Made by a program: the position numbers and the translations under genes. Positions 7,722 to 63,739 of a stretch of DNA of 64,000 bases are shown here, one piece after another. The first letter of the stretch is position 1, and every line of letters starts with the position of its first letter. Source of the DNA: Phallusia mammillata (taxonomy: Eukaryota); NCBI GenBank assembly GCA_965637545.1, contig OZ281497.1, positions 25,110,001 through 25,174,000 of the forward strand. The letters are read 5' to 3'. The notes under the pieces were generated by a model that was given only the letters and a program-made list of their open reading frames with translations, had not been told where the DNA came from and made no database searches.

Positions 7722-7828
7722 GTGTAGCAAATTGCAACGTGCTAGTTTGACTGTTAACTGTTGGGTTGCAGTAGATCTTGTATTTTCTCTTTGTAATTTA
7801 AAGAAAAACTTGTTTGCACTTATTCAAA

Positions 7829-10800
7829 ATGGACGTGGGACCAGAAAGCAAAGAATTTCTGTGGTGTAAGTATTAGTATTGTAACTATAATATATGTGGC
7901 ATAATGGAATTGATATCTGTCCCTTCGCCGTAATACCACATTTGAGTATTTATAGTATTTTTTTTAAACATGTATTTTTGCAATTTACGATAAAACGTGT
8001 TCACAATTTTTGGCCTGGAAATATTTGCTAAAAATATGTAAGTCAATTTTTTTACTTATAGGTGCCAAGTTAGGAACTTCAGCAAAGACAAACCAGTGGG
8101 AAGGCAGAGATGACGGAGTTCTGGAGCAGCTTGTGCTAAAGAGGGTATGTTACAAACCAAACTAAATGTAAAAATAGTTGTCTCAATTGATTGAAATTAG
8201 CAGAATCGAGATTCACTGCTTGGTTTGCACAACTGAAAATCTCAACACCAAAAAAGTTTATAGGTTTTTTAATGGGGGTCATACAGGCTATGTGATTAAC
8301 ATGCATCTTATTGGTAAACTTGAAACCACAAGAAAAACTCAGGGGAACATAAAAATTAGTAACCCAAGAAAATTAGATGAAAAAGCACCGATGATGGCAT
8401 AAGCCAGGGGTGGCCAGACCTGCTTCATGCTCGAGCCGCATATCACAAAACTTAGTTTAAAAAGACCCGCAAGACAAAAAATCAAAAACGAATTTATTCA
8501 CTCACAATGAAGTCTACGCTATCAAATATTGATTGTTGTATGGTGATGCTGTGTGTCTCCACCTGGGCTGCAAGGTGTTTGAAATTAGGCTGATATGATG
8601 AGAAAGTTTTTGTGTTTAGCTTCGTAATGACGTTTCAAGTTACTAGTTTTGTAATGATTGGGCGAAACTGGACAAATAAGACACACAGGTTTAACTCCAT
8701 TATTAATGAATGCGAACTCCTCCTCCCATTCTGTTTTAAAAGTATTTTTCTGTTTATCATTCTTTTTTTGCAGTTATTTCTCAACAACGTTTTTTTTTGG
8801 CTACACTTTGCAGTTATTGAATGTGCAACATTAAAGAGCCACAATCAAAGGCTCAAAGAGCTGCATGCGGCTCGAGAGCCGCAGTTTGGCCAACCCTGGG
8901 ATAAGCGTTGGTAATAAATATTATTCAAGAGAAATCACATTTATAATCAAACAAGGCAAATAATTTACTGAGATGACACCTCTTGGCGGCTATATGTAAA
9001 TGCCACTTGACTGCGGTGGCCGGTATGGCCAGCCTGTACACACTTTCTAAATGCTGTGGCCAACCTGTATATACTGTGTGACTAGTGTGACCAAAAGCGT
9101 TGACAGTTAGAGGTATGGGTTGAGGTGAGGGAAATAACACTTTACCCGGGTCTCATTTACCTACACAGCTTGGCCACAGCAGTCACACAGTATAAACAGG
9201 TTGGCAACTGTGGTAATTACACCCCTCTTGGCCTCTGTGTGGTGTTTCTAATTGGCTGTCGAATCTGCTAATGGTAAATTCTACAATTTTAATGCTTTTT
9301 CACAGGCTTGTCTGGGTAAGGGTGCCAAGGATGGTGAAAGAAATTTGGTGGAAGTGACATCGTTTGACTATCAGCAGGAGAAGATTGAGGCGTGCATTTG
9401 TTGTTTGCGAGGAGGTGGACAAGAGGATGTCAGTCTGGGTGATTTAACGATATTTCCACCAGCCATTTTCAAACTCGTTGAAGGTATAAAGTTTGCTCAT
9501 TGACTTCTTTTTTGTTTGGTGAGCGTATCCTAATTTTCTCAGCACTTTTTTACTTTAGTGTGTGTTTTCATACCCTGTATTGTTTAGTTATTTTCCCCAT
9601 TAAAACAACTTACATTACAATTCAGGTAGTGGACCAATTCATCTTGTTGGAAATCATATGATGATGGGTAAGTTTGTACTATTATTGAACTGAAATTATT
9701 ATGTTAGATGTACAACTAGTAGAACACACTTGTGACAAGATATTGTCAAGGTAGTGAAGTGATTTGGTGTATAATATTTACCAGGATATATATAGCTGTA
9801 CATCATTAGACACTTCTTAAGTGAAAAAAAGTAAGATGCATAAAGTGTGAATTGAGGTAAAACAAACTTGTTGCATTGATATGTCATTGACCAAAGTATC
9901 TATGCCTGGGTATTCTATTTGATCTTTTTTGTCAGCAAAAAACAAAGCAATCATTTATTTTGCACCAACTCAAGCAAATTACCCATTGCAAATGTATACA
10001 TAATAAACACATAATAAATGTCGAGTAGGGAATGGGCCAAGTCAAGCCAGAACCTGAGTACTTACATTACTGTTTTTTATGCTCGGTGCTCGGTCGGGCA
10101 GTTGCACAAACTGACCCAAGCAAAAGCTATCAAACTAGGTGGAATTGGGAATGTTTGTGACGTCTCAATGCACTGAGCATGTTTATCCGAGCACCGAGCA
10201 ATAATGTGAGATGCTCGATGCTCAACCAAACAGAGCATTTAAAGTTTTGGCCCATCCCTGATGCCAAGATCTCTTGTTTCACAAGATGAGGGAGATGACC
10301 TTTCAGATGATGAGCAGGAAGACTTTTCAGAGGAAGATGTATCAGAAGGTGACCTCTCAGATATGGAGGACGAGAAGATGGTCGAATTGAAACCAAAAGG
10401 AACAAAGGGAGAACCACAAAAACCAGGAAAAGCTTCTGCCAAGGTAAAACATTGAAGTAATCTTGTTTGTCATGATTTTGATCAAACAGAATTTCACTTG
10501 GGGTAGAAATATGCTTTAATTTTAAAAGAACATTTTTGAACCAAATAAAAACCTTTTCTAAATCCAACAAAAATATGATTAGTAAAAACATATATACACA
10601 GAATATAATGTTTCGGAGTTAATATATATATATATATATACATAAATTGATGCTTAAATAAATAAAGTATATTACTTGCAGTTTTAAATTGTTGCAAATG
10701 TGAATAATGCACATGAAAGTTTATAATCATACTTTCTATCGTACTGCACCTTATACGCAAGTTCACATGAATAAGTCTGCTTCAACCAACAAAACTCACT

Positions 10801-13800
10801 GCATTTTTTGCAGGGTGATGCAAAACCGAAGAAACAAGTGAAGGTCGAACCTGAAGAAGATGATGAGGACGAGTAAGAAATCTTCTAGTTTTTTTTTAAC
10901 AAATGTTAAAACAAAAATTCAGATAAAGGGAATACATTCAAACTGGGATCAGCTGTAAAGCATCTATGCCAGTGGTTCTCAAACTAATATCGATCACGTA
11001 CACAATCGTCTGACAACTTTTTCTATCGCTGCATACCACTAAACCCTGTTTGAATGGATAGACCAAGAAATAGGTCCCTTTCTCAACCTGGCTAGCATAT
11101 TTAGCAATTTCAAAGAATGTCCAAAATAAGAGTTTCGCCCAAACCAGAACTGATCAGTTGGGTCAGTTGAACTGCAATTTTAGATCTGACTTAAATTAAG
11201 TGTAGCAGAAAACTGCTTGCGTACCACAAAAAAAGTTCCAGCGGTTTGAGAACCACTGATCGATGCAGACCAGCAATCATGACATACTCATATATAATAT
11301 ATAAGCATTTCCATATGGCAAGGCACAGAAACATCTAGTTGTATTTCCTGGACCCAAAGTTGTCCCATTGCAGGCTAGATTTTTAGTCTGTGGTAATTTG
11401 CAGCATACGAGGTAGGCACCGGTGTTGTGATTTGACTTCGGCAGGTTCACCACTGAGCCTTTGTAGCTCAGTTGATAATGTGCTAGTCCAGGAAAGACTC
11501 CTGTCAGGGTTTGGAATCCCACCGCAGGCTAGATTTCTCCAGTCTGCGTCTTACCATATGGGATTGCTTGAGAGACTGGCTTGATTCGTTATAAGGCCTT
11601 CAATGGGCCTGGGTTACTATAAATTAAAACCTCAATGTTTTGGAGGGGCATTAAGTTAGGTGTTAAAGCAGTGGTTCCCAAACTATGCGCCGTGGCACAC
11701 TTGTGTGCCGCGAGATGTCATTAGGTGTGCCGCAAAAAATATTGAAATTAAAATCAATCAAGTAGAGTAGTAGTACCAGGTGCTTAGACCACTAGGCCAA
11801 CATGCTCCACGTCTCTGAGATGTTCAACTAGGCTATTTAACTATGAGAGTGACATGTATAGCGGCTTTATGACCTCATAGTTAGTGCCTTTGTCAGCTGA
11901 AAAAATTATTCAAATGTTCGAGGTGCGCCAATTAATTTTTGTTTTTTTCTAAAATGCGCCTTAAAAGAAAAAAGTTTGGGAACCACTGTGTTAAAGTGTT
12001 AACTTGGACAAACTGGAAAAAATGTTGATCAAAAGTTTTTATTGCATTTCTATATACTCGATAAACAATATTCCTACATACATAGGAACAATATACACAC
12101 TTAAAAACGAATTTAATCGAAAACAGAACTGCCTGAGAGCAGGTAATTTATATACTTCTTAGGGCACCAGTTTCAACGATCTCTGTTGTCATCAAATTAC
12201 TGTTCTATATCCCAAGTTCTCTTGCAGTTATGTTTTTATTTAAATAAACATACGCATATTTTGCAAACGATTCAATAAGGAAGTTAAACTAAACACTGAC
12301 CAAACAGTTTCTACAGAACACTAACACAAGGTTAACGTCGGAGCTGCAACAACATTTAAATACACTTGTATTGTTTTGTATATGGTAACTTTTGTAAATT
12401 TCTAGTCTTGACGATGAGGACATCGATGATGAAGATGATGATGAAAGCATGGAAGAAGATGTTCCAGAAGTAAAAGTTGAAGCAAAGAAAACCCCAAACA
12501 AGGTACAAGCAGCTCTCATGTTTGTTACACATAGTGGATCCCTTTTTTTATTCAGATGTAGTCCAGGCTCTAGTGACAGTTTACCGTGTTAAGAAACTGT
12601 AATTTTTAGGATAACGATTCACATCTCAGAAGAGATATTGTAAAAAACAATTAAAAAAACAAATTTAATAAATAAACAGTCTAATGAAATTTGACAATAT
12701 GTACACATTTAATAGCACAAAAAAAGTTATGGCCAATGCACTTTCAAACAAACTTAATGATCTTTGCATTTTACAATTCATTGAAAATTCAAAACATACA
12801 TTTTAGATATTTAAAACTTAAATTTTCCAGAACAAAGACCTGCTAAAACCTTTTATGTGACCCCAATTAGTACTTAAACTGTTGTAAGATGAATATAAAT
12901 TCAATACTAAGATCAGCCCAGAAGTGTGTATGCAACTCGTGATAACAAGGCACTCGTACAGTGGCGTATCCAGGGAGGGGGGGTCTGGACGATTTGATCA
13001 CCTGACAGTCACGCTTATTTTGCAGCTGCAGTTTTGTTGAGTAAGCTAGATATCAGCGGCGAAATCAGAAAACTACAAAGCTTTCGCTAAAATTAACTGT
13101 TCTTCCTGTCAATTGGACGGGTAGAGAACTGCCAAAGTCGAAAGTTAGGCCGGGTTTAGGTCTTGTACTTACAATTTTGGAAAAAGTGCTTTGCTACTTA
13201 ACGTGTCGTTTTGAACCAGAAAACGAAATAGGCAATGGAACAATTTAGTGGCAGTTTGACGTGTGAATTAGGTATTCAGTCTGCGGTCTAGGACATTTGT
13301 GTGGCAAATTTTCCGAAAATTTGCCAGATCTAATGATGTCATTAGGGAAATTCCCCGAAAAAATGTTGGGCCCCCCAAAAAAATTTCTGGATACGCCCCT
13401 GCACTCGTACATAAATCCTAGTACGACAGATCTATTAAAGGCATCATACCGAATTCACCAAGCATTCCCACAGATGGCAAGGTGTAAGCGCAGCCAAAGA
13501 TGTTCAAGCATTCTAGTCCACACACCAGTATTAACCCTTAACGTTTTCTGACACGCAGAAGCGTAAATTGACCAATGGACAAGCTGGTGATGAGAACAAG
13601 AAACCCGATAACACACCTTCGCAAAAAAAGAAGAAAAACAGTGAATCCACTCCCACAACACCACTGCAGCAAAAAGAAAATAAAACGCCACAGGTTCGTG
13701 AAAAAAAAACATCCAATGTAAACCACTTAAGTTAAGCAGAATTTGTCTTTTCCAAGCATAGTTACAAAAGATGTATTTACATGATTCAAAGGAATTTCTT

Positions 13801-16800
13801 TTTTCTTTGTCAAATACATGAACAGCAGTGTCTTTGTCAAATACAACTTATTTCCTTGGGGAAAAGTAATTCGTTGTTTGAAAATTGACCAAATTTTGTA
13901 TGTTAGGAACTTATGTGCCATTACATTATGTAACTTTTTTGACCTTTTATTGTGGTGACTTGTCATTCAAAATATTTAAATCTCACTCTGTCTGTTTCAG
14001 CCACCATTTGCGGGCTTTGGTTTCACAACCCCCTGAGTACAAATCTCAATCAGTTTTTTGTACTCAAGCCGAATGGTCCAGGGCTCTTGATCAAGCCTTG
14101 GTGACAATGTTTTTAAAATACCCGATCCGCTAGGTGGGGCAATTAAGTCAAGCGTATGCGCCTTGCACTCAAATAAATGAAAACGCGCTTTCTGCGCAAG
14201 TTCGAATCGCGCACGTCTGCTGTCGACATTTACCATTGTTAGTCAACTTCTTGAGGCGGCGGAATTTCGAGTGTCATTTTCCTTCTGCTGTCAACTCATG
14301 TGATTTATGATGATGATACGTTTGTTTATGTAATTGACTGGATTTAGAATTTTTTTTTGAAAACAAGTTCGACTTTAATAAATTTTTACAGGCATGGTAG
14401 TTTGCACAATATTTTGTCAAAAAAAACCTTTTTTGTCGGAAAAAAAATCTCGACGAACAAATCAGTAGATTTTGAAGTGTGTAGTCTGGGGTTGTGAAGT
14501 ATGCCGCGAAATTTTCTTTCATATGATGCGACTCATTTTTGTATTAGGGCCTATGTACGAAACGACGATAATATAGCCTCATTTTTACATTATTGTAGCT
14601 AAAAAGAAAACTCATTCTTCAAAATAAATCTGCAAATTGATGTCTTCAAACTACGTTTGCGTTTTTAACCAACTGTACCGCAAAAAAGTAACGTTCAACC
14701 AAAAAACAAAAACTTTTCAGTTTATAACAGAAAATCATAAAAATATCACGTATTTCAACGTATCAGAAGGGATTTAGAAAGTAAGTTGTTGTGCACAAAA
14801 CAATATTTTGTTACATTATTGCATGCTCAGTTACTTGCTTATTATGCAATCAATGCATTTTAAGTAAAATTCCTAAAAACGTTTAGCCTCGTGCCAGACT
14901 GTCTGTTGAAAATATGATAATTCCATTATAATAGTGTCGTCCCGACGCTAAACAACCGCTGCTCGGGTTATTTCTGTCTCTAGGGAGAAAAATATTCAAT
15001 TAATTTTAGCGCATGCGTTTTGTAAGTGGCCAAATTAATTGTGTAAAGCATTTATTGGTTAATTTAAAGCAACCATTTATTTAAATTTTAAGAAATTTGT
15101 TTTTGAAAATTTGTAATTTGTAGTTTTTGGATTATTTGAGACAGGGTTTTCCATGTTTTTTACCACAAACATGGGTGCGACTTGCACGTCAGACCTCTTT
15201 TGACATTTTAAAGTGGAGTGTTTTAAATAAAAATTGGTTGTGAGTTGTGACGTAACAAGGAAAAATATCCTTTTATTTTGTCTTAAAACAGCGTTTTAGT
15301 CCAATCACTCTGGTTTGCATTTGTAGGTGTTTGAAGAAATTTTATAAAAAGTTGAAAACCTCGATTCACCTCAAACGCCTTATTCGGAACTTGGGTCGAA
15401 ACGAGAAGTCTTCCCAGTGTTTGACCCCTGCGTGACCCAGCGGTTCACCTACATGGCCTAAAAGCATGTTACCTCAAAAACAGATGTAATTGCGAAAGTA
15501 CATGGTCAATGAGTTTTATACTTTGTTCATTTGTTACATTGCAAAGAGTTGAAAACATTTCAAAATATTATCTAAAATCCGCGCCTGAACTCCATCTAGT
15601 AACAGTCTCACAGACAGACATGCCGTCGAAAACCACGTTGCCCCCTTTCAACAATGCGCCCGACTTAACTAAAGTCTTAAGCCTCCTTCGCTCTGTCCCC
15701 GCGAATGCATTGACGCAAATTGACGCCTCTCGCCATTGTTATTTGGAAAGCCATTCGAATCTGGACAAGTACACTCCCACGCCACAAAACTGCTTGTCAT
15801 CTCATTACGACTGTCGTCTATGCCGCCCATTTTGTGTGGTAAAATCGTAGTTTTCCGACCCCCTTGCTTAATTAATGACAGTTTTGCGGCTCATTTGCGT
15901 TGCGGTTTTGCTACCGCGCTCTGATTTGTAACAAGCACTGCTGTCAAAGCGTAGAAGCCTCGCATTGTAGTATGGCGTGATTTTATATTTCAACGAACTT
16001 TATGCTGAAATTTCGCGTGAAACAACCATGTTAAAAACGCGCTATGGGGAAGTGAAATTACGTTGCGTAAACATTGTCATAATGTGCCACAGAAAATATA
16101 ATTTCTGCCACACATTTACAAAGGCGTTAAGCATCATTTTTTTTTAAAAAGAAAACAATCGCGTTTAACTTCTTGTCTAATTAAATAAAGTTGTCGAATA
16201 GAACCCAGACCTCTTGCATATGATTCCATGTTTGTAGTTAATAGAAAATACGGAATGCTTTTTAAAGTCATTTGTGGTTACATTATTTCAAACGTGTAGG
16301 ACTGTTGTGGTTAAACATTTACTTGTTTTATGCTAAAACGAAAAAAATCCTCGTTGAAAAACTTGTAGATTCTAGTTAAATTGTTTCTGGAATGATAGAC
16401 ACAGACTGTGCTTTTATTGCAAAATATATTATTAAAAAAGCAAACATAATTTAACCTGTAAATAAACGTTTCCAAACTTTCAAAACACCAATGTACAATT
16501 TTTCAGTGACAAACTCCAGAACAGGTCTTATTTTATAACAACCATTTACCACCTATCTTTTCGGACCCCAATCCTTTCCCATCAAAAATTTTATCTCACC
16601 CCTGTACACAACTCAATGTCCCAGTGATCTTTACTCCCGGAAGTTTCTAGTGTTTACTCTTACCCTCCAACGGAATATTGGGTCTTGAAAGCAGTCCCAG
16701 AGTGTAGCTTAGGCTCGCCGGCCCCAACCCCTGAAGCCTTTCGTCTTTGCTACAGCCATTCTGCTCGGAACAAAGCGAAAAGCCTGCTCAAACACTTGAC

Positions 16801-18826
16801 TTTACGTGGTTAACGCGCTCTTATTGTTTCTTCACAATGCCAGGCCGCTTAACTTCGCTACTTGTTGCTCGTATTTAATTGGGATCAGTGGTCTTGGTCG
16901 ATTCCATGTAAAGTTACAAGTCTCTGTGATATCGTCGATTCGGTCACGTATCTCTCTTTTACCGTAGTCGGCGCTTGGTTCTTGCTTAGGCGTTTGTTGC
17001 AAACAATTTGATTTTGACGCTTTGCCAACTTTGCAATCATGCCTTAGGGTTAACAAGCGTCCTGGATTTTGCAGACATATCCGCAATTCTGGCTTTGAAT
17101 TAATAATTTTTAAAAATACTCTTTAACGTCCGGAATTTTAGCGTCATGTAGCGTATAACCTTCAGTAGTTCTCACAATTATATTCTTGTGGTACTCAAAG
17201 GTTTACGTTTCACCTATTGTATGTGCTGATTTTGATGTATGACCAACATTCATGCAAAACAACTTAAAATTAAACACTATTTACTGATTTTGGCGCGTTA
17301 AAAGCTGACGATACTCTGTTAAAAGGACCGGATCCTGTGACAACTTTTTGTTTTGTAACTTATTTTCAAACAAACCTGCGCTTTTTATATCCGTGATAGT
17401 AATGCCATTTTATGTCAAAAATGGGACTGTTCTGGTTGGTAACATGCAACCACATGTGATGTAACGCATGTTTGGTGGTGCCCCAGATATATTTATTTAA
17501 ACCGGCCGGAATTTTAATCACTCAGATATGGTAGCCCTATCATAGTTTTCTAACCCCGACCAGCTAATTCTTTAGGTCGTGTGATTTTTTTTATAAAATG
17601 ATAAAATACTTTTGTCTTGTAAAAAAAAACGAAAAAAATGTCGATTAAATACAAAATATTGTTTAACTTGGGTTCAAAAAGTAGCCTCTTAGTGTTGATC
17701 AAAAATATTGCTTTTTTAATTTGTTTTATCTTTAAAATGGGAAATTATATTATTATGTGTTAGCCGGGTAAAAGTGACACTAACTTGACTTTTGTGTTTG
17801 GGTAAAAAACAACGCACCAAGTTGGTAATGGTTTTTAGTCGTAGCAACAAACCCCTAAAAAAACTCTCAGAATTCGAGTCTTGTCAGCAGTCAATTTGTT
17901 TGAACCAAAACTTTTGGTAACTTTTTAGCAAAATGCATTTCGTCTGAAATTAGGCCTTTTATGGTTGGTAAGGTTCATTTTGAAATTATGCAACCCTAGA
18001 CGATAAAACTGTCCGGATTATGCGAAGATCCGGATTAACCAATGTCGATTAGTTAAAGCCTTACCACATTACAAATCATTTGTACCTAGAATTTTGTCCA
18101 AATTAGGCGAATGTCCGGATTAACCTAGGTTTACTGTATTTGCATTTGCTGTGACAGGTCCATTTTATATCATTGTTTCTGTTTCAGAGCGGCAAGAAAA
18201 CACCTGGCAAAGTTTACGAATCCGTTGACGAAGTAAAAGCTGCTATCAAAAAGGTAACCCGCGTTTATTTGTGACAACTTGTGGTAGTTCGCAGCTCTTC
18301 TGTAGTTTTTGCCGCATGATCAAAATTGTATGCTGCGTAATTGAGTTCAGTATATGACATCATTGTGACGTAACAATATGTTTCCAGTATCCCGGCGGCA
18401 AGCCACGCAAGGAAGACAAATTCTGCAACTGGGTGAAATCAGCGTTTAAAGTCAAGAACGATGAGGTACGATTTTTCATTGTCCCTTTTTTATCAGCCTT
18501 TGTAGTTGGTAATGCTGACATTTTGTGTAAAACAATTTTGCTATAATTTTTTTTATGCAGTATAAATTATTGTTGAGTTTTTCGTTTTAGCAAGGGATTT
18601 TAAGCATTAATTTTTGCTGTCGTTGCTGCTTTAAAGTTTGTTCCAAAAATTGCCCTATTTGTCCTACGTTTGTACTTGTTTGCTGCAAATTGTGTTCATA
18701 ACTTTCTGTTGAGTCTGTTTGGCAAGGTCAAAACTTAATCAAATTTCTAATAAGTTACATGTTGTTTTTGCTTTGCAGTGGATCAAAGAATTGTGGAAAG
18801 CACACAAGAAGGACCTCGGCATCTAA
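7829..18826 (+). CDS. NPM1: Nucleophosmin/nucleoplasmin family protein (NPM1-like), 11 coding exons, ~326 aa
   Basis: Exons 7829-7865, 8062-8144, 9306-9483, 9626-9667, 10286-10443, 10814-10872, 12406-12502, 13559-13693, 18188-18253, 18388-18465, 18779-18826; 981 nt, open. It has a nucleoplasmin core (FLWCAKL...LVLKRACLGKGAKDGERNLVEV...VSLGDLTIFPPAIFKLVEGSGPIHLVGNH), acidic tracts, a basic NLS/TP region and an NPM1-C-like end (SVDEVKAAIKK.PGGKPRKEDKFCNWVKSAF...IKELWK). The symbol reflects similarity; it is probably a pro-ortholog of NPM1/2/3. Confidence 0.9.
8405..8898. mobile_element. hAT MITE in NPM intron 2
   Basis: TIRs CAGGGGTGGCCA / TGGCCAACCCTG; TSD gcataagc/ggataagc. Confidence 0.8.
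10026..10260. mobile_element. hAT (TAGGGATGGGC-type) MITE in NPM intron 4
   Basis: TIRs TAGGGAATGGGCC / GGCCCATCCCTG; internal inverted repeat gctcggtgctcgg/ccgagcaccgagc; TSD atgtcgag/atgccaag. Confidence 0.7.
10970..11258. mobile_element. hAT MITE in NPM intron 6
   Basis: TIRs CAGTGGTTCTCAAAC / GTTTGAGAACCACTG; TSD atctatgc/atcgatgc. Confidence 0.85.
11451..11620 (+). mobile_element. tRNA-derived SINE, copy 1 (degenerate)
   Basis: tRNA-like head (tgtagctcagttg...gggtttggaatccc) plus a body collinear with 55302-55475. Confidence 0.7.
11669..11988. mobile_element. hAT MITE family B, copy 1
   Basis: TIRs CAGTGGTTCCCAAACT / AGTTTGGGAACCACTG; perfect TSD tgttaaag. It is near-identical (inverted) to 47655-47972. 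Confidence 0.92.
12959..13401. mobile_element. hAT MITE in NPM intron 7
   Basis: TIRs CAGTGGCGTATCCAG / CTGGATACGCCCCTG; perfect TSD cactcgta. Confidence 0.9.
14001..14036 (+). CDS. Candidate alternative terminal exon of NPM (PPFAGFGFTTP*)
   Basis: Strong acceptor (tctcactctgtctgtttcag, AG 13999-14000) in phase 0, matching the exon-8 donor. It gives 11 codons then TGA, with AATAAA at 14172-14177. Confidence 0.4.
   Translation, partial: PPFAGFGFTTP
17045..17539. mobile_element. hAT-type (TAGGG-ended) non-autonomous element in NPM intron 8
   Basis: Ends TAGGGTTAACAA / ATGGTAGCCCTA; homologous to 1245-1911. Confidence 0.65.
17995..18138. mobile_element. Tc1/mariner-pogo (Tigger-like) MITE fragment
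   Basis: Ends in GGTTTACTG+TA and has repeated TCCGGATTAACC subterminal units. Only one end is recognisable. Confidence 0.4.
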
Positions 18827-19031
18827 GCTCAAATCTTGCGGCAGTTTTCATTCTTTTCAAACCCTGGCACTGCCCTTCAGTTCGACATTGTGTTGAATAT
18901 GTGATCACGTTCTTATTCAATTTTACACTTGTTGTACAGTTGCACTGTTTTCAATTTTCAACCTGTCGGATGCGTTCTCACGTGACTTCACGCGTGTGCA
19001 GCCAACCGTGAAGCGCGGTGACGGTTTTGTG

Positions 19032-19037
19032 AATAAA
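19032..19037 (+). terminator. Probable polyadenylation signal of NPM
   Basis: AATAAA about 205 nt after the stop codon at 18826. Confidence 0.45.
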
Positions 19038-19125
19038 CGAATGCGGTGTCTGGACATCATGGACCGTTGTGATTTAATGTGTCCATTACTTAAAATCCGG
19101 GTCATTTTACCAGGTCTGCTGTTAC

Positions 19126-19302
19126 TAGTGGTGGGATTCAGCCGGTTCGCACCGGTTCTATAGAACCGTCTCACGAAATTTTATGAGATCAGCCAACCGG
19201 ATAGCATTACTGGTTACTGTCAATAGTAACAGAACCAGTATCGGCTGAAAAACATGACTTTTGTGGTAGAACCGGCTGACAAAAAATTGAATCCCACCAC
19301 TG
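19126..19302. mobile_element. hAT MITE family A, copy 2 (inverted relative to copy 1)
   Basis: TIRs TAGTGGTGGGATTCA / TGAATCCCACCACTG; TSD gctgttac/gctgtcgc. It shares ggttctatagaacc and tcacgaaattttatgag with copy 1. Confidence 0.85.
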
Positions 19303-54100: not shown

Positions 54101-57100
54101 GCCGACGATCCATAAACAACATACACAATAATCACAAACACTGGAAATGTACATCTTTTTCAAACCGCTGACATTTCTTGTTCAAACTCGGCTCGGTGCT
54201 TGAAATGCCGTTCGGTGCAATATGGAGTGGGTTACCAAGCATGTATTTTTTGTAACGGAAACGCGTTTTCGTGTGCTCTGCTTCGACGTTAATCACAATG
54301 GAAAAATGTTTTGACCTTGTCATAGCTACTACGTCACAACCATCGATAATGATTCGTGTCATGCTGCTTATTTTGATGTATCCTGTCACCCGCAAGTGTT
54401 GGTAATACACCGAGGTGTTTGAAAGAAAAAAAGGGATATATATTTGCTAAGCTGTCCAATTGCAGGTTTATTTCGTAATAGTGATTTATATGGTCACGTA
54501 ATAGGCGATTTAAATATAGTTTAAAATACTTTTGTCGTGTCCCCGATGATTTACGTGACATTGTCGTAAAACGCAATGTTGCTAGTTGATTTGTTCTATT
54601 CTACGTACATTACGAGGAAACTATTCTTGATATTTTTAGAGTCCACAACCATTTTCCGGACAAACACAATGTGCATATCCTTTATTCTGCAGTACGTACG
54701 GCTTACGCGCACATCCTTTATTATTTTCGATTTTGTTGCCAAGAAAGCCCATCTTGCTTTTCTCATTTAAAATTTCCCACTTCCACTTCCCATTAAGCTG
54801 TAAAGCTGGAATATCGTTACTTTCGTTAAATATCGCTTTATAATATCACCTGACGAGATGCTATTTAAACGAAACGTGTCCCGGATATTGGGTATTTCCT
54901 GCTACTTATGACCTATTTTCAAGGTTTCGTTTCAAATGCCTGATCATCTCATAGGTATAACCATAAAGTGTATGTGACCTGATAAACGACAAGACACTTA
55001 AATGACGAAATAATGCCTTGTTCCGGACCTATGTTAGACGTATTTGCTTCATTTCTTATTTCCGTTCAGGTTTTGGCAAGTCCGTCTTTTGCCCTGCTTT
55101 GCAGCATGCTTCAAAAATATTTTAATGACATTTTGTTGAAAGTTACTCGTTAGAAGCTAATTCGTACGTTGGTATGATCAAAAAAATATGTCTTCTTTAC
55201 CCCATGGTAGATTTCATAGAAAAATTTTCTTGACTTTTTTAAGTTTGTTTAACATTTGAAAAACTAAACAAATAGTCTTATGTTTATTTCGACGGATTCT
55301 CCACTGACCCTGTGTGGCCCAATTGGTGAAGCGCGAGTCCCGGAATGACTTCTGTCGTGGGTTCGAATCACACCGCAGGCTAGATTTTTCCAGTCGGTGT
55401 CTTGCCATATGGGAATGCTTAGGGTACCGGCTTGATTCGGTATCACGCCTTTAATGGGCCTGGCGTACAATTATTTCCTAGGTACATAACTTTTTTTGCC
55501 TTGGGTTTAAATCATTCTCATTGGGGTCTTTGGTTTAGCGCAATACCGTTTCTGACATTGGGGACTTTAGCCGTTTTAGCGTTTCCCACCGTTGTGTATG
55601 GTAATCGCGAACTGACGTCTCAAGTGGTTGGAAAGCGCGAATCCGGTTGCCTGGCGTCACCGGCGGTTGCCACGACGACGCGATTTTAAGAGATGACGCG
55701 CGGTCTTGCCGATTTGTCAGGATATCGTTTAATCGATTCTTCAAACATCTTACTCTTATTTTCGTCCCACTGACGTGCCACAAAATCAGGATGAGGTTTA
55801 GGTACGATTCTGACGCAACAAAGTGTTGTTGAACGCTACTGGTTGTCATGCCAACGTTTGGACTTTGATCGAGTTATTTTACGTTCTAGTTATAATATCC
55901 CGCAAAGAACTGACGCACTTTCACAATAGCAATGTGCGTAATTTATAAACAAACAGCCCAAAAGGTTAAAACTAACACAAACAGGTGCTTAATTGAAAAG
56001 CGTTTTTTTCTTTCTTTGGTTGGTCCCTACGTTTTCTATGACAGTTCAAAATGCAATTCCAAAATTTGTACAAGCTTTGTGCAGTATTAAACCGTGGATT
56101 CATACAGTACCGTGATTTTTTTCAAACATTTCTGCTAAAGCATTTTTAGCAAAGATGTCCATCGCTTTGAGATTACAAAAACCAACGCTTCTATCCTTGT
56201 TTATTATTTCTTTTGCTTTGATCACCACTACTGTACGTAGTGAACTAATTGAACTTCCGATCACGATAATGTCAATGAGAAGATCAAGGTGTCAATAGAT
56301 ATTAGCCGACACCGATTTCCTACTTAAACCACAGTCTGCAGTTCTGTCTCGCCGCCGAACTTGTAGTCTTACGTGCAAGTTTGTTATCTCTTAAACTGTA
56401 TAGTATTTGTGCCCAGTAGTTAGATTACATCGAAATTTAACCAAAAGTCTTTGAGGACTTCGAATGCACCATGAATACGTGAAATCCATGTTGTTTGCCA
56501 TACTTATAAACGGTACAGTAAAATAACAGTTGTTTTTGTTTTTTTGCAAGGCGGTTTGCGTACAAAATAAATCTGTTTTAACGCAAATTAATTGAGTAAG
56601 TTTAGCAAAAATATACCTAATTTGTACCTACATGGAGGCAAAGTTTGTTGGATAAATACCCCATAACACAATATCACCACATGCAAACATAATATGGGAT
56701 GTTGCCTTGACTGGAATGCGTTTGTACCAAAGTCAACTCTGGTGCATATTATGCACTCTTATCTAATGTGTCACTGTTTGTATTCACTTGAGTTAGATTC
56801 CAATGTCAACGTACCACCCACGTCGCTTCACGCCCGTCTTGTGTATTTGCAAATCCGCGGTGTGTAAGCGGTTGGCTGCATGCGGCCTGAAACAAACTAG
56901 CTGTCGAGAGAGTTTCGCCCGGCGTTTGCAGTTCCACGAGCCCTTGTCTGTGAAAGCGTTGTGGCCGCTTTGAACGCAGACTGCGAGTTGTTGCGCTCTG
57001 CGAGTAAGGAGAAAGAGTTTTCGGACCGGCACTGAGTTTTGACAATAACTTTTACAGCATACGGGAGTTACCGACATTGCACGAAAGCAGACTGCGATTT

Positions 57101-60100
57101 GGGGACGCTAACATGCAAATTAGTTGCTATTTGAATGTTAATGATCAATGTATATGTCATCGCGTTCAACTTTTGCTTGTTTGCAATCTAACTTGAGTCA
57201 CAAACTGGTTTCACGTTAAACCGCGACAAACTCAACGCAATGGCTCCAACTGCTTTGTAAAAACGGAAATCATTTTTACAATCTCGCCAAGTTTTTGGAC
57301 CAGTCCAGAACGGTCCTCTTTTTTAAACTAAAATTTGTGACACTTACAGACCACCTGGTAGAAGCATTTTCCTAATAATATGACATCATTTAACAAATTT
57401 GTCATTCAACTGTTGTAATGCTAAACAAAATACTAGTTGTTTTTTCAAGAACCTATATTTTACTGACGTTTCGCCCACCAGAACGGTAGGGCTTCTTCAG
57501 AGCAATGAATGATATATTGCGAGCACACAAGCAAAAATGCACTAAAGGACATTTTTAATACTACGTCATTTAGTTCTAATTCAAGTGAAAACGTTAAAAC
57601 GATTTGCTCATAACAATCGCATTTAAACATCCTAGCCCATTGCTAATCTATGTTGCTTAATTGCGAAAGCTTCTGTGCTAGAATAAAAACAAAAACCGCC
57701 AATCTAGAAAGAAAACTTCTGTGCGTTAAGAATTTAAAAGCAAAAGTGTGCACATTTGTGTGTGAAATTTGGTCGAAAACCGCTTGACCTTGTTGACTGG
57801 TCGTTTCCATCGTTTTTGTCGCGGTTTGCCATGTTGGTACTTTCTCGCCGAAACCTGAAAGTCTGAGTCGATCACGATCGACCAGTAATCGTGATGCGTT
57901 GTAGCGAAAAACCTTGATTGAAATCGAGATAAGATAAGTTGGGTTTATTAAACTAGTTATAACTTGTGATCAGCGATTATCCTCACTGCAACGTCTGGCT
58001 TCATGAACGGTTGGTTTTTCTAGCTTTGTCGCTATTCATAGATGGTGAAAAAAGGAGAAAAAATGGATAGTTTTAGGCAGAAATATTACAAAACTAAAAC
58101 GTGCTATTGTTTTTACACTTTATTTTGCTTATTATAACGTTTGCTTTTTTAAAATGTTTTTATTACTGATGCTGAGAGTAAGCAAAGTGTTCAACTTTAT
58201 GCAAAATCAAGTTAAACAAAACCGTACAAACCTATCACTTTACATTGACAAATGGCCTGATGTTAGACTTTGCACACGGTGTTTAAGACTGACCGGTATG
58301 AGGTATTTTTATGACTTGAAGCGATTCTTGTTTTACCACAAGAATGACAAACACGTTGTTGCTACTTTTTGGTTTTAAGTTTATAAACCACAATGTTAAG
58401 TGTTTTTCCTAGTGGCATTGCGTGGGTGAACAGCAGCACGTCACACTTAAGTGAAGGTTCGATTGTAAAAACTCATTTCTCATTCCTTTTTACAAGGTGG
58501 TCCTTCTAAAAACACAAGTTGTGCGTTTAATTTCGCTGATTCCAAGTTTGTAGTTGCCCATAATTAACTTTCGTTTATTATTTTTTTGTTTATTTGCCTT
58601 TTATTGTGGAATTCTTCTTAGTGAGCGATTGCATGTTTAGGTTTTGAAGCGATCTTTGTGTAGTAAACTGTTTAAAATTTTGAAATAGTTTTAAATTGTT
58701 AAATAGACTGTAAATTTTTTTATGTTTTGAAGTGTAAATATGTTTAAAAATAGCTGCAATAGTAGTTAAACAGAAACACAAAAAGCCTGACATGTGTGTA
58801 ACAGTTATATACGCTTTGTTAAACTCATAAAAATGGCTGTTTGTCTGGAAGATTCCCCCTTCCAACGCCCCCCCCCCCCCTCCCAAAATAAAATAAAATT
58901 GCGTAGTTACGTAATATCAAAAAGACATAGATAAATCATAAGTGAAAAACTCTAAGAGTCTAAAATCAATCGGAAACCGCATGAACTGGCAACTTAAAAG
59001 CGACAAAAATGGTTGCTATGTTGTGTTTTCTCACCACATCTCATTGCCAAATCTCCGCTGCCCTGATCAAAGCCTAAGGGGGGCGCGTTTTGACTTTCGA
59101 TTGCTCTGATTTTACCGTCGGATGCGATTTTGTCTATTATCGTTGATTTGATCGTCCGACTATGTGCTGTGGTCTAGCGGCTTCGTCACTGCGCAAACGT
59201 GCACACGAGCTTTGGGGAAAACGTTTCTTAGCCATATTCGGCATCAAATTGCATGCGAAGTGATTCACAATTCGGTCTACATTGTTGTTAATTTTGTGTT
59301 TTTTTTTACCTTTTTACGAGAGATAGATCGTGTCTCACATAAACCAGGTTATGATTTTGAAACTACATACGAGCTATGCCTCGCAACACACCTTGCAACA
59401 CATGCATCAGACTTTGGCGATTTTAAAGAAGTTTTCTTCAAAAAAAACACGGAGAACTTGGCTCAACGGTGCCAATGACTGCGGTCAGCATTGGTCAGTT
59501 CTGTCCATTGACAAAATGTGCACACCAATTAATTTTGTTAAGTTCTTGAATGCACTTTGAAAAAGCAACGTTCTTTTTTGTAAACTAAAAAAAATTCACA
59601 AAAAAAAGTTCCGAGCTTTTTTAGCGTCGGGAATTCCCCGGCGTATGACGTCACACTTTGCTATTTTCTGCAAAAAAACGCGCCTGATGACGTCACACAC
59701 TCGAAAGGAAACCGAATCGAATTCATCCTGGAGCTCGGAGTTCATTATTTCGGCCTCGATCGTCTTGTAACGACTCGATAAGACCTCAGCCACTTGTCGA
59801 GCGATTTGGTGAAATTGTCTGTAACCCGACACCCTATGTTGTTCTGCGTCTTGCTATCTCTGTCCACATGACATACAACAAACCGATGATCGGCATTTTT
59901 GTGCGTATTTTGCTCATTCTGCCGTCGACCACGCAACGCAAAGTTGCATGTACTTAGACTGTTTTAGGGACAGCATTTTTTAGGGGGTTGAAAATTTGTC
60001 TATTTGTGTATGTGCTTAAAACTGCGCAATGAAAATTTGACGTTTCAATTGGTTTACGGAATAAATTTATTTCGTTTTAACTTCACTTGAAAATATTGTG

Positions 60101-63100
60101 ATATTTTTGTTTAGATTCAATTGCGTTTCATGTTATATGTGATGTTATAATTCCAATTTTCATATTTTTTACATTAGTTTGGGACATAGTAGACCGCTTC
60201 TTGTAATTATGCGCAATCCTTCAGAAGATACTGTTTCAATCAAAATAAACGTAATTAACTATCACTAACCTGCTAAGTTTGTGTGAACGAAAAATAGTTA
60301 GTTCCATAATCGCAAGGTGTTGCAAGTGTATTGTAGTGATTAACATAGTTTATAAACATGTATAGCAAAATCCTTTTGTTTAATAATCTTACCATTTTTT
60401 AGCGAATTCTTTCTTGGAAGTTGCGGCATCAAGTCACACCCCCTGCAGATTTGGGACTTGGAAAGGTTGGTAAAAAACATTGTGTTGTTTGTGATTAGTT
60501 CTTTGACGCCCTCGCGTGGTCGTTTATGTGCTTCAATTTTTTTGATATATTTCTAACGCAACGAATTTTATACTTTAAATTTAAGTCACATTGAGCATAC
60601 ACTTTTATGGTAGGTTTGTTTTTGTTTAATCATCAAATATAGGTCAAGGTATTGTGTTAAAAAGTTTTCTTAACCGTTATTTACCGTGTCCATGAATCCA
60701 TGATGCTTTGCATGCATTTTATGTAAAGTCCCAAACGAGGATTGTGTCTGATAAGAGAAAATCCAAAAGTTGTTGCAATTAAGCCTCATGTGAAGTTTTA
60801 TTTAAACTTTAGCCTGAACCCGACCCAAAAAGCCAGGCCCGACTTACACCTATGTCTGTCATACAAAATGTATTTTTTATTCACAATGCCAAGGCTGGTG
60901 GCAAATACATCTCCAAACCTTCAAAAAAATTCGCCTGACATCTGCCCAGTCTGGGCCAATTTCTGTTTGCACCAGGTCCCCCCAAAAAAACAACGCCGTA
61001 GAATCGGCTTTACGGTATCAATGACAGCGGTCATCATTGGTCAGTTCTGTCCATTGTCGCAAATCTGACCGCCAGTCTAGAGTTACTCCTGGGAAACCGC
61101 CAACAATACGTTGAGCCGACGTATCTCTGTGACCTTCGCCTTGCGTTGCGCCGAATGGTCGTGTGATCATAATCTAATCTAATGTTGTTTTATCCCCTTT
61201 GGTTTCTCTCTGTCCTTCGACAAGTCTGCGATTTTGTAACGGAATACTGTATTGTTGTTGCTTGGTTGTTGTGTGCAACAGTTGACATTACAAAGCAAAC
61301 TGTAGGTAAGTGATTTATAAGTTCGTTTGCGCTGTCTTCTGTTCAGACATTTCTTTCTCGATTATCCGATCTATTTGGTTCTATTTGTTTGAAGTGTGAA
61401 CGGTTAAGCAAACAAAAGAATAATCGAATTCACACTTTTCACATCAAAGCGTTTGGAACGACACTTAAAAAGAATTAAATGTTTATTGTAGAGTTGTAGG
61501 TTGGGTCGGGCTTTTCTTGTCAGATTTGGGTTCGGACTCGGATTTGGGAATGACTGCACAATTTCGCCAACTTACGGACCCAATTTAGGCTTTTTCACAT
61601 GCAAATCGGGTTTTAAACAGGTCTCGGGCTTGTCCTTTAGCTCTGGTTTGCTTGAATGTTTGTGTTTTTGGCCGGATAAAGTCCTTTTGAGTGTGGAAGT
61701 GTTCGTAGTTGTCACTGGCAACTGCAAACACAACCACCGTATCAGGGTATCGTTTCTTTTACTACACTGAAACCTAGTTATGGTGCTTAGGGCCTGCTAA
61801 GTGACAACAGAATAACCGCGGAAACACTGCTTGTTTTTTTACTGTCTTTGTTACGTTGTTTCTGTTAGATGCGACTTTTTGTATAGCCTGTTTGTAAGAT
61901 TTTTTTAAAATATCTAAACGTTACGAATGACATCTCATACAGATTAAAAAATCCCAGATACAGCAATATGCAATTAATTCAAACCAAACCAAACCAAACC
62001 AAACTCACATTTTCTATTGCTTGAAATCTGTGTTTTTGTGACAGAGTTGAGAAACGTTATGACCTCGGCTCGGAATTTAAGTTGGGGGCCGGTGCACTCG
62101 ACACCCAATTCCTATCCAAGGATTTGCTCATCACTGCCGGCTACGACACTTATATCAGATTGTGGGACACACGGACGTCACACAGGTAAAATTAAACGCA
62201 GTGCTGTTTATTAAGCTATGGGCGATTACACCCATTACGGACACTGGCATTTTAGGCGGTAATTAGATAGAACAGTTTTTAGTTTTATGAGATCACCTTT
62301 ATGTGACGTCATAGTTTATCAATATGTGACGTCATAGTAAATGAAGCCAATCAGGCTTCTTTTGAGGGGTGGCAATCATAAAAAGGTTAAGAATCACCAA
62401 TTTGAAATAATGCAAATGTCTGTTGTGTGATGCAATTCAGGCAAATACGCAATTTATTAACCCTCTTGAGAAGTGTGTGTGTGTGTTGCGTGACATCTCA
62501 AAGCTTAGTTTGATGGTTTATTTAACACATATTGTATCAGCTTCTAAATGTACTGCTCAAAGCTGTAAGTCGGAAAGGTTTTTTCGGCCGGGTTCGGGCT
62601 TAAAGTTTTAACAAAAAGGACTTGATTTAGGCCTGACTTTCACTTGGTATCATTTGTGTCGCCATTTCATTAACTTGAGTACCTATAATAATTCAGACGT
62701 TTTTTAATAAAATCTGTTTTGTGTATTAGGTCGTTTTTCAATTGTTTCAGAAATGCTTCCTATCGAATTTTGTTTTCCATATTCTTTGATTGAAACTTAT
62801 GTAGTAATATTGGTTTTGTACGTTAGTATTGTTTCAACTATATTTCATAAGTGGCTTGTTTTTTTAGAAATTGCGTCAAGATTTGGGAAGAGCCTCATGA
62901 CAATACAATTTATTGCGTCACAAGTGATGCAAATCATATGATTTTATCGGGTTCATGTCGTCACGGAGTTGTGAGATTGTGGGACATGCGTAAGACAAAA
63001 CCTGTTCAGGTGCGAACAAATTATTCAACTAAATAACTATGGATTAACCTTTATTCCTTATTGGGTTCCATTCTTTCTTCATTATATTTTATAACAGTAG

Positions 63101-63739
63101 GTTTTGGTTTTGACTTTGCACTGAAAGACTGAGGACACCGGTTTGGGAACCGCCGTTTTTTTGCCTTTTTTGGGGGGGACAAATCTCGATCAAGGTTGTT
63201 TATGTCTGTACATTCGGCCAAGTTTCTGCCCTTTTCTACTTTCTAGAATTTTCTAACGTGGCTCTACATGATCTCTAGCGCCAACGCGTGGAACTTTTTT
63301 TGTGTATAAAATAAAGTTGCTTTCCATTTGTTTTTACCTCAGCGGCCACTTTGCCTTGTTTTACTTTTAAAAACATAAATTCATCAGTTGTATTTTATGA
63401 CCCAAGTTTGGATTGCCATACTAATTTTCAAAAACAGCAGGATTGCCCAGAGTGGCGCAATGTGGAGGGAGGGATCATACTTTTTCGGGGATCCTAGAAT
63501 GTTGTGAATTCATAGAAGTTGGTTAAAAACACCAATTCTATCGATACCCTTTTGTGTTTTACAATTCTGTGCAGTATGCAATAATCTTTAACTTTACTAA
63601 AAATGTCTGTTTCAATTCTTTGCAGACATTCTACTTTGGTTCACGTCGTGTTAGCAGCCCCGTATATTCACTCCAGTTCACACGGACTCACTTATTTGCT
63701 GCCCTGGCCCGCGGACTGCACTGTGTGGAGTTCACGTGA
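51121..63739 (+). CDS. FBXW4: F-box/WD repeat protein 4 (dactylin), 9 coding exons, ~388 aa
   Basis: Exons 51121-51299, 51724-51810, 51993-52202, 52517-52649, 53166-53263, 60403-60465, 62045-62185, 62868-63009, 63626-63739; 1167 nt, open. It has an F-box (LPDDLWISVFHWLD) plus FBXW4-specific strings FMPWTQL, PLQIWDL, GAGALD...AGYDTYIRLWD.R, WEEPHDNTIYC...GVVRLWD, SSPVYSL..T..HLFAAL. Confidence 0.93.
55302..55475 (+). mobile_element. tRNA-derived SINE, copy 2
   Basis: A box (TGGCCCAATTGG) and B box (GGTTCGAATC) in a tRNA-like head, followed by a non-tRNA body shared with 11451-11620. Confidence 0.75.
60803..60850 (-). repeat. Family E repeat fragment
   Basis: aaactttagcctgaacccgacccaaaaagccaggcccgacttac is the reverse complement of the 63903 copy's end. 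Confidence 0.6.
61491..61670 (+). repeat. Family E repeat (degenerate)
   Basis: agagttgtaggttgggtcgggctttt...gggttcggactcgg. Confidence 0.45.
61981..62003. repeat. (AAACC)n microsatellite
   Basis: aaaccaaaccaaaccaaaccaaa. Confidence 0.85.
62558..62637 (+). repeat. Family E repeat fragment
   Basis: tgtaagtcgg...cggccgggttcgggcttaaagttt...ttaggcctga. Confidence 0.6.

What the first reader, a model, noticed from the sequence alone, without database searches (positions are those of the whole stretch)
7829..63739. Intact NPM > FGF8/17/18 > FBXW4 block in an invertebrate chordate
Seen: three adjacent genes on the same strand in the order NPM, FGF8/17/18, FBXW4, with no recognisable intervening gene. 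Established: human 10q24 has NPM3-FGF8-FBXW4 in this order and orientation, and the paralogous NPM1-FGF18 and NPM2-FGF17 pairs exist. FGF8-FBXW4 linkage is a recognised genomic regulatory block. Inference: the whole triad predates the vertebrate genome duplications and survives here despite the fast rearrangement typical of tunicates, implying cis-regulatory constraint on both bystander genes.
Basis: partly seen in the sequence, partly recalled or inferred. Interest (0 to 1): 0.7.

Follow-up and report, generated by a model that had tools for sequence, protein, structure and literature searches.

The report
Ancestral NPM-FGF8-FBXW4 gene trio in sea squirt

Summary
Observation confirmed. The window is Phallusia mammillata chromosome piece C4. 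It carries three intact genes on the + strand:
- a nucleophosmin-type NPM gene (CDS 7829-18826)
- Fgf8/17/18 (28207-44687)
- FBXW4 (51121-63739)

I found no protein family, Rfam or tRNA match in the two spacers of about 9 kb and 6.4 kb.

Two corrections to the picture. RNA contigs show three further NPM exons at 18.2-18.8 kb, which encode the NPM1-type C-terminal domain. The FGF gene starts 10.7 kb upstream of its first core exon.

Orthology holds for all three:
- All 120 listed relatives of the FBXW4 protein are FBXW4.
- The FGF core scores 85-88 bits against FGF18 and FGF8b, against 51 bits for the next FGF.
- NPM is the only nucleoplasmin-domain locus in the genome.

Ciona intestinalis also has FGF then FBXW4, 3.2 kb apart on one strand. 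Other human 10q24 neighbours have dispersed: DPCD to another chromosome, OGA and BTRC 6-7 Mb away.

An origin before the vertebrate genome duplications is supported but not new. Simakov 2015 lists fgf8-fbxw as a deuterostome microsynteny, and the NPM-FGF pairs in vertebrate paralogons already imply it. Cis-regulatory constraint remains an inference. No conserved non-coding DNA was detectable, and nothing here bears on NPM as a bystander. Interest is modest.

The parts
5167..7251 (+). Upstream flank: 3' part of an inositol-polyphosphate kinase (IPK family) gene. It ends about 580 bp before the NPM start codon and is not part of the vertebrate block.
   Evidence: Pfam IPK PF03770 at 6502-6741 (3.3e-18) and 6778-7248 (6.8e-24).
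7829..9667 (+). NPM exons 1-4 (7829-7865, 8062-8144, 9306-9483, 9626-9667): the nucleoplasmin core domain.
   Evidence: Pfam Nucleoplasmin PF03066, E 6.9e-15, above its cut-off. The best solved relatives are nucleophosmin NPM1 cores. GT-AG introns and an open frame. It is the only PF03066 locus in the genome.
10286..13693 (+). NPM exons 5-7 (10286-10443; 12419-12502, with an alternative acceptor possible at 12406; 13559-13693): acidic tracts and a basic linker.
   Evidence: Open frames with GT-AG borders and consistent phases. The composition is seen directly in the translation. The acceptor of exon 6 was not confirmed by RNA.
13694..18187 (+). NPM intron 7, 4.5 kb, the largest NPM intron. It contains interspersed repeats at 17045-17539 and 18005-18138.
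   Evidence: An RNA contig joins the end of exon 7 to 18188: the loose end at 18185 equals the last letters of exon 7. Repeats.
18188..18826 (+). NPM exons 8-10 (18188-18253, 18388-18465, 18779-18826 including the stop): an NPM1-type C-terminal domain.
   Evidence: GT..AG joints 18253>18388 and 18465>18779 appear in contigs of 3-4 RNA-type runs. Exon 9 hits Pfam NPM1-C PF16276 (E 1.7e-4, 21.9 bits, positions 18-38 of 49). It also aligns to the nucleophosmin C-terminal domains 2vxd and 2llh at the matching positions (E 0.19-0.26).
18827..19059 (+). NPM 3' untranslated region (minimum extent).
   Evidence: RNA contigs cover 18777-19059 with no differing letters (table 8).
19060..28206 (.). NPM-FGF spacer, about 9.1 kb. 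It holds a SINE-like repeat at 19124-19304 and no recognisable gene.
   Evidence: No Pfam, Rfam or tRNA match. RNA-type contig sets hold 2-5% of the words of 14.2-24.2 kb. Repeat. The stretch 24.2-28.2 kb was checked by open frames only.
28207..44687 (+). Fgf8/17/18 gene with 5 coding exons: 28207-28256, 29524-29590, 38991-39159, 41415-41533, 43839-44687. Intron 2 is 9.4 kb. The last exon adds a basic tail of about 220 residues.
   Evidence: The exons reproduce P0001 (UniRef Fgf8/17/18, Phallusia mammillata) with 1 mismatch and GT-AG introns. Pfam FGF. The P0001 core scores 87.9 bits against FGF18 and 84.7 against FGF8b, with FGF1 next at 51. Exon 3 alone hits only FGF18 and FGF8b among solved structures.
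44688..51120 (.). FGF-FBXW4 spacer, 6.4 kb. It holds one young 320-bp interspersed repeat at 47655-47972, whose other copy in the window is at 11669-11988 on the minus strand. No recognisable gene.
   Evidence: In Ciona the equivalent spacer (3.2 kb) has no called gene.
51121..63739 (+). FBXW4 gene with 9 coding exons: 51121-51299, 51724-51810, 51993-52202, 52517-52649, 53166-53263, 60403-60465, 62045-62185, 62868-63009, 63626-63739. Intron 5 is 7.1 kb.
   Evidence: The exons reproduce P0002 (388 aa) with 4 mismatches. F-box-like and WD40 Pfam hits. All 120 listed relatives of P0002 are FBXW4, aligned over 94-100% of the query in nearly all.

Best explanation
The window holds the single-copy tunicate orthologues of nucleophosmin/nucleoplasmin (NPM), FGF8/17/18 and FBXW4. 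They lie head to tail on one strand, in the order that human 10q24 has for NPM3, FGF8 and FBXW4. This part is shown.

The arrangement is inherited from at least the common ancestor of tunicates and vertebrates, so it is older than the vertebrate genome duplications. This is inferred by parsimony.

The most likely reason it survived tunicate genome scrambling is that FGF8/17/18, a developmental signalling gene, is controlled by enhancers spread through its flanks and large introns and into the neighbouring FBXW4 gene. A break between the genes would then cut the gene off from part of its control region. This is the genomic-regulatory-block model. It is inferred from vertebrate experiments and not shown here. 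For NPM the same mechanism is only a possibility; close spacing may be enough.
For: - Gene identity and integrity.
- Single NPM locus and six FGF loci in the genome, the same FGF number first described for Ciona (PMC3420111, which adds a seventh).
- Continuity: no N. One RNA contig spans NPM exons across 13.7-19.06 kb. Two DNA runs hold all the words of 14.2-24.2 kb.
- An independent tunicate: in Ciona intestinalis an FGF gene whose exons match P0001, tail included, ends 3.2 kb upstream of FBXW4 on the same strand.
- Selective retention: DPCD is on C1. OGA is at C4:18.14 Mb and BTRC at C4:19.43 Mb, against the trio at C4:25.11-25.17 Mb.
- Literature: vertebrate order Fbxw4-Fgf8-Npm3 and NPM-FGF pairs at several paralogons (PMC2446394). 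Fgf8 enhancers inside fbxw4 in zebrafish and mouse (PMC9002814). fgf8-fbxw as a deuterostome microsynteny (PMC4729200). In tunicates 54.6% of the conserved pairs join a developmental gene to a non-developmental one (PMC3514665).
Against: - There is no direct regulatory evidence in this window.
- blastn of 28-64 kb against the Ciona locus aligns only two coding exons. Against a third ascidian-like FBXW4 locus it aligns only the last exon.
- The 7.1-kb FBXW4 intron 5 is not large in Ciona and contains interspersed repeats, so its size may reflect insertions.
- Both spacers are short (9.1 and 6.4 kb), which lowers the chance of a break without any constraint.
- NPM adjacency in a second tunicate could not be checked.
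- The finding was picked from many windows, so some conserved pairs are expected by chance.
Confidence: 0.6

Rival explanations
1. Neutral survival. The trio is ancestral but persists only because the two spacers are short and offer few places for a harmless break, and because a scan of many windows will meet some surviving ancestral pairs. No enhancer sharing is involved.
For: The spacers are only 9.1 and 6.4 kb. No conserved non-coding DNA was found. The large intron is not conserved in position with Ciona. The hemichordate genome paper itself notes that slow rearrangement can keep clusters without functional constraint (PMC4729200).
Against: Tunicates rearrange fast. Ciona keeps only 197 ancient pairs (PMC3514665). 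Two adjacent pairs with orientation kept, in two ascidian families for FGF-FBXW4, while DPCD, OGA and BTRC dispersed. NPM-FGF adjacency also survived in several vertebrate paralogons.
Confidence: 0.3
2. Constraint of another kind. The genes are kept together because they share a chromatin domain or boundary. For example, the strongly expressed NPM gene and its 3' end could insulate or prime the FGF promoter, rather than enhancers being lodged inside bystander genes.
For: NPM contigs have high depth in all four RNA-type runs (45-490). NPM-FGF adjacency is kept in every vertebrate paralogon listed in PMC2446394, whereas FBXW4 is kept in one only.
Against: No data here bear on chromatin. Depth of contigs is a poor measure of expression (caveat). 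Known vertebrate Fgf8 enhancers lie on the FBXW4 side.
Confidence: 0.07
3. Artefact: a misassembly joined unlinked genes, or the genes are paralogues wrongly named.
For: None found. The only gaps are that no tree was built for any of the three and that NPM was never compared as a whole protein.
Against: No N in the window. Two DNA runs hold 100% of the words of the NPM-FGF interval. The same FGF-FBXW4 arrangement is in an independent Ciona assembly. The similarity margins are large. There is a single NPM locus.
Confidence: 0.03

Closest known systems
Vertebrate 10q24-type block FBXW4-FGF8-NPM3, the Fgf8 regulatory landscape or genomic regulatory block
   Same: The same three gene families, the same order, all on one strand, FGF in the middle. 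FBXW4 lies downstream of FGF with many introns.
   Different: The block here is compact, 56 kb from the NPM start to the FBXW4 stop. The further neighbours DPCD, OGA and BTRC are not adjacent. No conserved non-coding elements or enhancers have been shown. The NPM gene carries an NPM1-type C-terminal domain, which I recall NPM3 lacks (the NPM3 point is from my own knowledge).
Deuterostome fgf8-fbxw micro-syntenic linkage (Simakov et al. 2015, Extended Data Fig. 6e)
   Same: The same FGF8-family and FBXW pair is linked outside vertebrates, and the authors cite the Fgf8 landscape paper.
   Different: That linkage was scored loosely, with up to five intervening genes. The species shown could not be read here. 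NPM is not part of it. Here the pair is directly adjacent, in a tunicate, and a third gene is kept.
Ciona intestinalis Fgf8/17/18-FBXW4 locus (GCA_018327825.2, AP043571.1)
   Same: An FGF of 412 aa with the same core exons and long basic tail lies 3.2 kb upstream of FBXW4 on the same strand.
   Different: FBXW4 is smaller (8.3 kb) and lacks the 7-kb intron. The region upstream of the FGF gene, where NPM would lie, could not be fetched.
Vertebrate NPM1-FGF18, NPM2-FGF17 and npm4-fgf24 pairs
   Same: [quoted passage not shown]
   Different: Those are duplicates from the two genome duplications. Here one unduplicated pair stands for all of them.

Membership tests
FGF8/17/18 subfamily | FGF beta-trefoil core domain | tested here: met
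   Pfam PF00167 on exons 4 and 5, above the cut-off (34.9 and 40.7 bits).
FGF8/17/18 subfamily | Closer to FGF8/17/18 than to any other FGF subfamily | tested here: met
   The core of P0001, which the window encodes with 1 mismatch, scores 87.9 bits against FGF18 and 84.7 against FGF8b, with FGF1 next at 51. Exon 3 alone hits only FGF18 and FGF8b. Sources name it Fgf8/17/18. No tree was built.
FGF8/17/18 subfamily | Leader region split over small 5' exons, giving 5 or more coding exons instead of 3 (gene structure recalled from my own knowledge) | tested here: met
   Five coding exons. Two small ones of 50 and 67 nt encode a hydrophobic leader. No signal-peptide predictor was run.
Nucleophosmin/nucleoplasmin (NPM) family | N-terminal nucleoplasmin core domain | tested here: met
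   PF03066, E 6.9e-15, 55.9 bits against a cut-off of 25.8. The best solved relatives are NPM1 cores.
Nucleophosmin/nucleoplasmin (NPM) family | Acidic tracts after the core | tested here: met
   Exons 5 and 6 translate to runs rich in Asp and Glu. This is read directly from the sequence.
Nucleophosmin/nucleoplasmin (NPM) family | NPM1-type C-terminal helical domain | tested here: inconclusive
   Exon 9 alone gives PF16276 at E 1.7e-4 but 21.9 bits, under the 29-bit cut-off. It aligns weakly to 2vxd and 2llh at the right positions.
Nucleophosmin/nucleoplasmin (NPM) family | Pro-orthologue of vertebrate NPM1/2/3 | tested here: inconclusive
   It is the only PF03066 locus in the 240-Mb genome, so it is the sole candidate. 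No phylogeny was run and no whole NPM protein could be retrieved.
FBXW4 (dactylin) | N-terminal F-box followed by a WD40 propeller | tested here: met
   F-box-like PF12937 on exon 1 (6.2e-9). WD40-type hits on exons 7-8. The precomputed domains of P0002 agree.
FBXW4 (dactylin) | Closest relatives over the full length are FBXW4, not other F-box/WD40 proteins | tested here: met
   All 120 listed hits of P0002 that carry a name are FBXW4: Ciona 44-46% identity at E about 1e-110, vertebrates 31-37% at E 1e-67 to 1e-50, with coverage of 94-100% in nearly all. Neither a reverse search nor a tree was run.
Genomic regulatory block (target gene plus bystanders) | Synteny of target and bystander kept across distant lineages | tested here: met
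   FGF then FBXW4 in Phallusia and Ciona. Vertebrates and other deuterostomes from the literature. NPM was tested in Phallusia only.
Genomic regulatory block (target gene plus bystanders) | Conserved non-coding elements spanning the bystander genes | tested here: inconclusive
   blastn against Ciona and against a third ascidian-like locus aligns coding exons only. These species may be too diverged for the test, and no closer genome was reachable.
Genomic regulatory block (target gene plus bystanders) | Enhancers inside bystanders that act on the target gene and not on the bystander | not testable with these tools
   This needs reporter assays, ATAC-seq and contact maps. It is known only for vertebrate Fbxw4.

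The most novel reading that the evidence does not exclude
NPM is a second true bystander. Enhancers or a boundary needed by Fgf8/17/18 would lie in the NPM 3' half (the 4.5-kb intron 7 at 13.7-18.2 kb) and in the 9-kb spacer. That would explain why NPM-FGF adjacency survived in a tunicate and in every vertebrate paralogon. The 56-kb Phallusia trio would then be a miniature, electroporation-ready version of the vertebrate Fgf8 landscape, in which the bystander model can be tested on both sides.
Probability: 0.25. Interest if true: 0.55.

Novelty: new member of a known kind. Interest (0 to 1): 0.3.

Why it matters
It adds a clean tunicate instance, with NPM included, to a known ancient linkage around FGF8. 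It also shows that only the trio stayed together while other 10q24 neighbours scattered. If enhancers are found in the neighbours, Phallusia would offer a compact system for studying how a developmental gene's control region holds unrelated genes in place. Phallusia embryos are transparent and easy to electroporate. As it stands, the finding confirms expectations rather than changing them.

Tried and rejected
- Word-index searches with the FGF last exon and with the FGF core of P0001 found only the Phallusia protein itself. No other FGF sequences were obtained and no FGF tree was built.
- The feature search of the ESM Atlas with FBXW4 exon 3 gave only generic beta-propeller families.
- The exhaustive HMMER search with FBXW4 exon 3 found P0002 and two fragments, P0003 and P0004. 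Their contigs are metagenome assemblies that carry an ascidian-like FBXW4. They reach only 1.9 kb upstream of the F-box exon and show no FGF.
- Look-ups of Styela (P0009) and chiton (P0125) FBXW4 were not on record. Synteny outside Ciona could not be tested.
- NPM upstream of Ciona Fgf8/17/18 could not be tested. The Ciona locus stops inside the FGF gene and no NPM protein id could be obtained, because single NPM exons are too short for the length window of the word search.
- Conserved non-coding elements: none by blastn.
- Repeat content of FGF intron 2 and FBXW4 intron 5: only the most abundant short repeats were scored, so the unique fraction is unknown.
- Ten paper searches found no open paper naming NPM or FBXW4 next to Fgf8/17/18 in a tunicate or amphioxus. 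The supplements of PMC3514665 and PMC7530604 are not held.
- The joined (spliced) protein models were not sent to any search. Searches used single exons by reference, or the database proteins P0001 and P0002. Scripts only checked frames and borders.
Full report
**What the window is.** The window has no N and about 38% G+C. It is G000:C4:25110001-25174000 of a 240-Mb genome. The last FGF exon is 99% identical to the UniRef/nr protein 'Fgf8/17/18, Phallusia mammillata' (P0001). An exhaustive search with one FBXW4 exon returned 'F-box/WD repeat-containing protein 4-like, Phallusia mammillata' at 99% identity (P0002). Earlier notes of this scan also call this genome a sea squirt.

**The three genes.** Pfam scans of single exons by reference gave:
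- Nucleoplasmin at 9252-9500.
- FGF at 41348-41593 and 43818-44684.
- F-box-like at 51070-51300.
- WD40-type matches at 62025-63033.
- An IPK kinase just upstream, at 6502-7248.

I fitted GT-AG borders so that the exons reproduce P0001 and P0002.
- FGF has 5 coding exons: 28207-28256, 29524-29590, 38991-39159, 41415-41533 and 43839-44687. There is 1 mismatch in 417 residues.
- FBXW4 has 9 coding exons from 51121 to 63739, with 4 mismatches in 388 residues.

For NPM no database protein could be fetched. Its model rests on splice sites, phases and RNA. Ten coding exons run from 7829 to 18826, giving 302 residues, all with GT-AG introns.

**A correction found with RNA.** I laid the contigs of four RNA-type runs of the same species on 14201-20200.
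- They showed GT..AG joints 18253>18388 and 18465>18779 in three to four runs.
- A loose end at 18185 carries the last letters of the exon that ends at 13693.
- Contigs run on to 19059.

NPM therefore continues across a 4.5-kb intron into three more exons. The middle one matches the Pfam NPM1-C domain (E 1.7e-4, below the cut-off because only part of the domain lies in that exon). It also aligns to the matching positions of the solved nucleophosmin C-terminal domains.

The gene is thus nucleophosmin-like in build. The NPM-FGF spacer is about 9.1 kb (19060-28206), not 25 kb. The FGF-FBXW4 spacer is 6.4 kb.

**Orthology.**
- FBXW4: all 120 listed relatives of P0002 that carry a name are FBXW4. 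Nearly all align over 94-100% of the query. Ciona is 44-46% identical and vertebrates 31-37%.
- FGF: the P0001 core scores 87.9 bits against human FGF18 and 84.7 against FGF8b. The next FGF (FGF1) scores 51. The exon before the core hits only FGF18 and FGF8b. The split 5' coding exons fit the FGF8 subfamily; that gene structure is from my own knowledge.
- NPM: it is the only nucleoplasmin-domain locus in the genome, so it is the sole possible counterpart of NPM1/2/3.
- The genome has six FGF loci, the number first described for Ciona (PMC3420111, which adds a seventh).
- No trees were built, because no other FGF or NPM sequences could be retrieved.

**Nothing in between.**
- There is no Rfam family and no tRNA in the window.
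- The 20 longest open frames in the spacers and big introns have no Pfam match.
- RNA-type contig sets hold only 2-5% of the sampled words of 14.2-24.2 kb. Where laid, they fall on the NPM exons and on short repeats, apart from a few contigs of depth 3-5.
- The spacers hold short interspersed repeats at 17045-17539, 18005-18138, 19124-19304 and 47655-47972.
- The stretch 24.2-28.2 kb was checked by open frames only.

**Is the arrangement real and old?**
- Two DNA runs hold all the words of the NPM-FGF interval.
- In an independent assembly of Ciona intestinalis, the gene upstream of FBXW4 on the same strand is an FGF of 412 residues, 3.2 kb away. Its exons match P0001, including the long basic tail.
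- Vertebrates have the order Fbxw4-Fgf8-Npm3, and NPM-FGF pairs at the other paralogons (PMC2446394).
- Tunicates are the sister group of vertebrates, so an origin before the two rounds of duplication is the simplest reading.
- Retention is selective. DPCD, next to FBXW4 in vertebrates, is on C1. OGA, next to NPM3, is at C4:18.14 Mb. BTRC is at C4:19.43 Mb.

**How new is it?**
- The hemichordate genome paper already lists 'fgf8-fbxw' among deuterostome micro-syntenic linkages (PMC4729200, Extended Data Fig. 6e).
- The pre-duplication linkage of NPM and FGF was already inferred from vertebrate paralogons.
- I found no open paper that names NPM or FBXW4 beside Fgf8/17/18 in a tunicate. The three-gene statement for a tunicate may therefore be unpublished, but it is an expected instance of a known kind.

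**Why it is kept.** The regulatory-block model is the best guess.
- Fgf8 enhancers lie inside fbxw4 in zebrafish and mouse (PMC9002814).
- In tunicates the few surviving ancient pairs are enriched for a developmental gene next to a non-developmental one (PMC3514665).

Nothing here tests the model.
- blastn of 28-64 kb against the Ciona locus, and against a third ascidian-like FBXW4 locus from metagenomes, aligned coding exons only.
- The 7.1-kb FBXW4 intron 5 is not large in Ciona and carries repeats.
- For NPM there is no regulatory evidence anywhere that I could find.
- Neutral survival of two short spacers remains a serious rival.

**Method note.** The spliced protein models were never sent to a search tool. 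Searches used single exons by reference, or the natural database proteins P0001 and P0002. Scripts only checked frames and borders.

Noticed in passing
window 19124-19304 (also 18005-18138): A short interspersed repeat of about 180 bp lies just after the NPM 3' UTR. It has dozens of copies at 86-91% identity genome-wide. It is covered by hundreds of RNA-type contigs with summed depths of 4,000-14,000, so this repeat family seems abundantly transcribed or embedded in many transcripts.
   Followed up: partly
window 47655-47972 and 11669-11988 (minus strand): A young 320-bp interspersed repeat has copies at 94-98% identity on all eight large contigs. One copy is in the FGF-FBXW4 spacer and one in NPM intron 5. 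It looks like a recently active SINE or MITE.
   Followed up: partly
L002:3039-10000 (G000:C4:25177040 to at least 25184000), 3 kb beyond the window's end: A long tandem array of units of about 195 bp begins about 3.3 kb downstream of the FBXW4 stop and runs to the end of the fetched 10 kb. No gene was seen between FBXW4 and the array.
   Followed up: no
window 44030-44687; L001:5928-6497: The tunicate Fgf8/17/18 carries a very basic C-terminal tail of about 220 residues that the solved vertebrate FGF8 and FGF18 chains do not cover. Parts of it, including an acidic-basic motif and Arg/Lys/Asn repeats, are shared by Phallusia and Ciona. Its function is unknown.
   Followed up: partly
window 5167-7251: An IPK-family inositol phosphate kinase gene ends only about 580 bp before the NPM start codon. 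The NPM promoter must be very compact, or it overlaps the kinase gene's 3' end.
   Followed up: no
L004-L009 (ENA ERZ27241785-99, JGI 3300001689 and 3300001913): Metagenome contigs carry a complete ascidian-like FBXW4 gene, presumably host DNA in microbiome samples. A FLYWCH-domain open frame lies in its long first intron. Gene calls there are prokaryote-style and split the exons.
   Followed up: partly
window 12406 versus 12419: The first AG after the pyrimidine tract of NPM intron 5 (exon start 12406) would put exon 6 out of frame. The AG 13 bases further on (exon start 12419) keeps the frame. This is either unusual acceptor choice or a missed small exon.
   Followed up: no
G000:C4:18.14 Mb (OGA), 19.43 Mb (BTRC), 25.11-25.17 Mb (trio): Several human 10q24 genes remain on one Phallusia chromosome, though megabases apart. 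DPCD moved to C1. This suggests chromosome-scale linkage kept with local order scrambled.
   Followed up: partly
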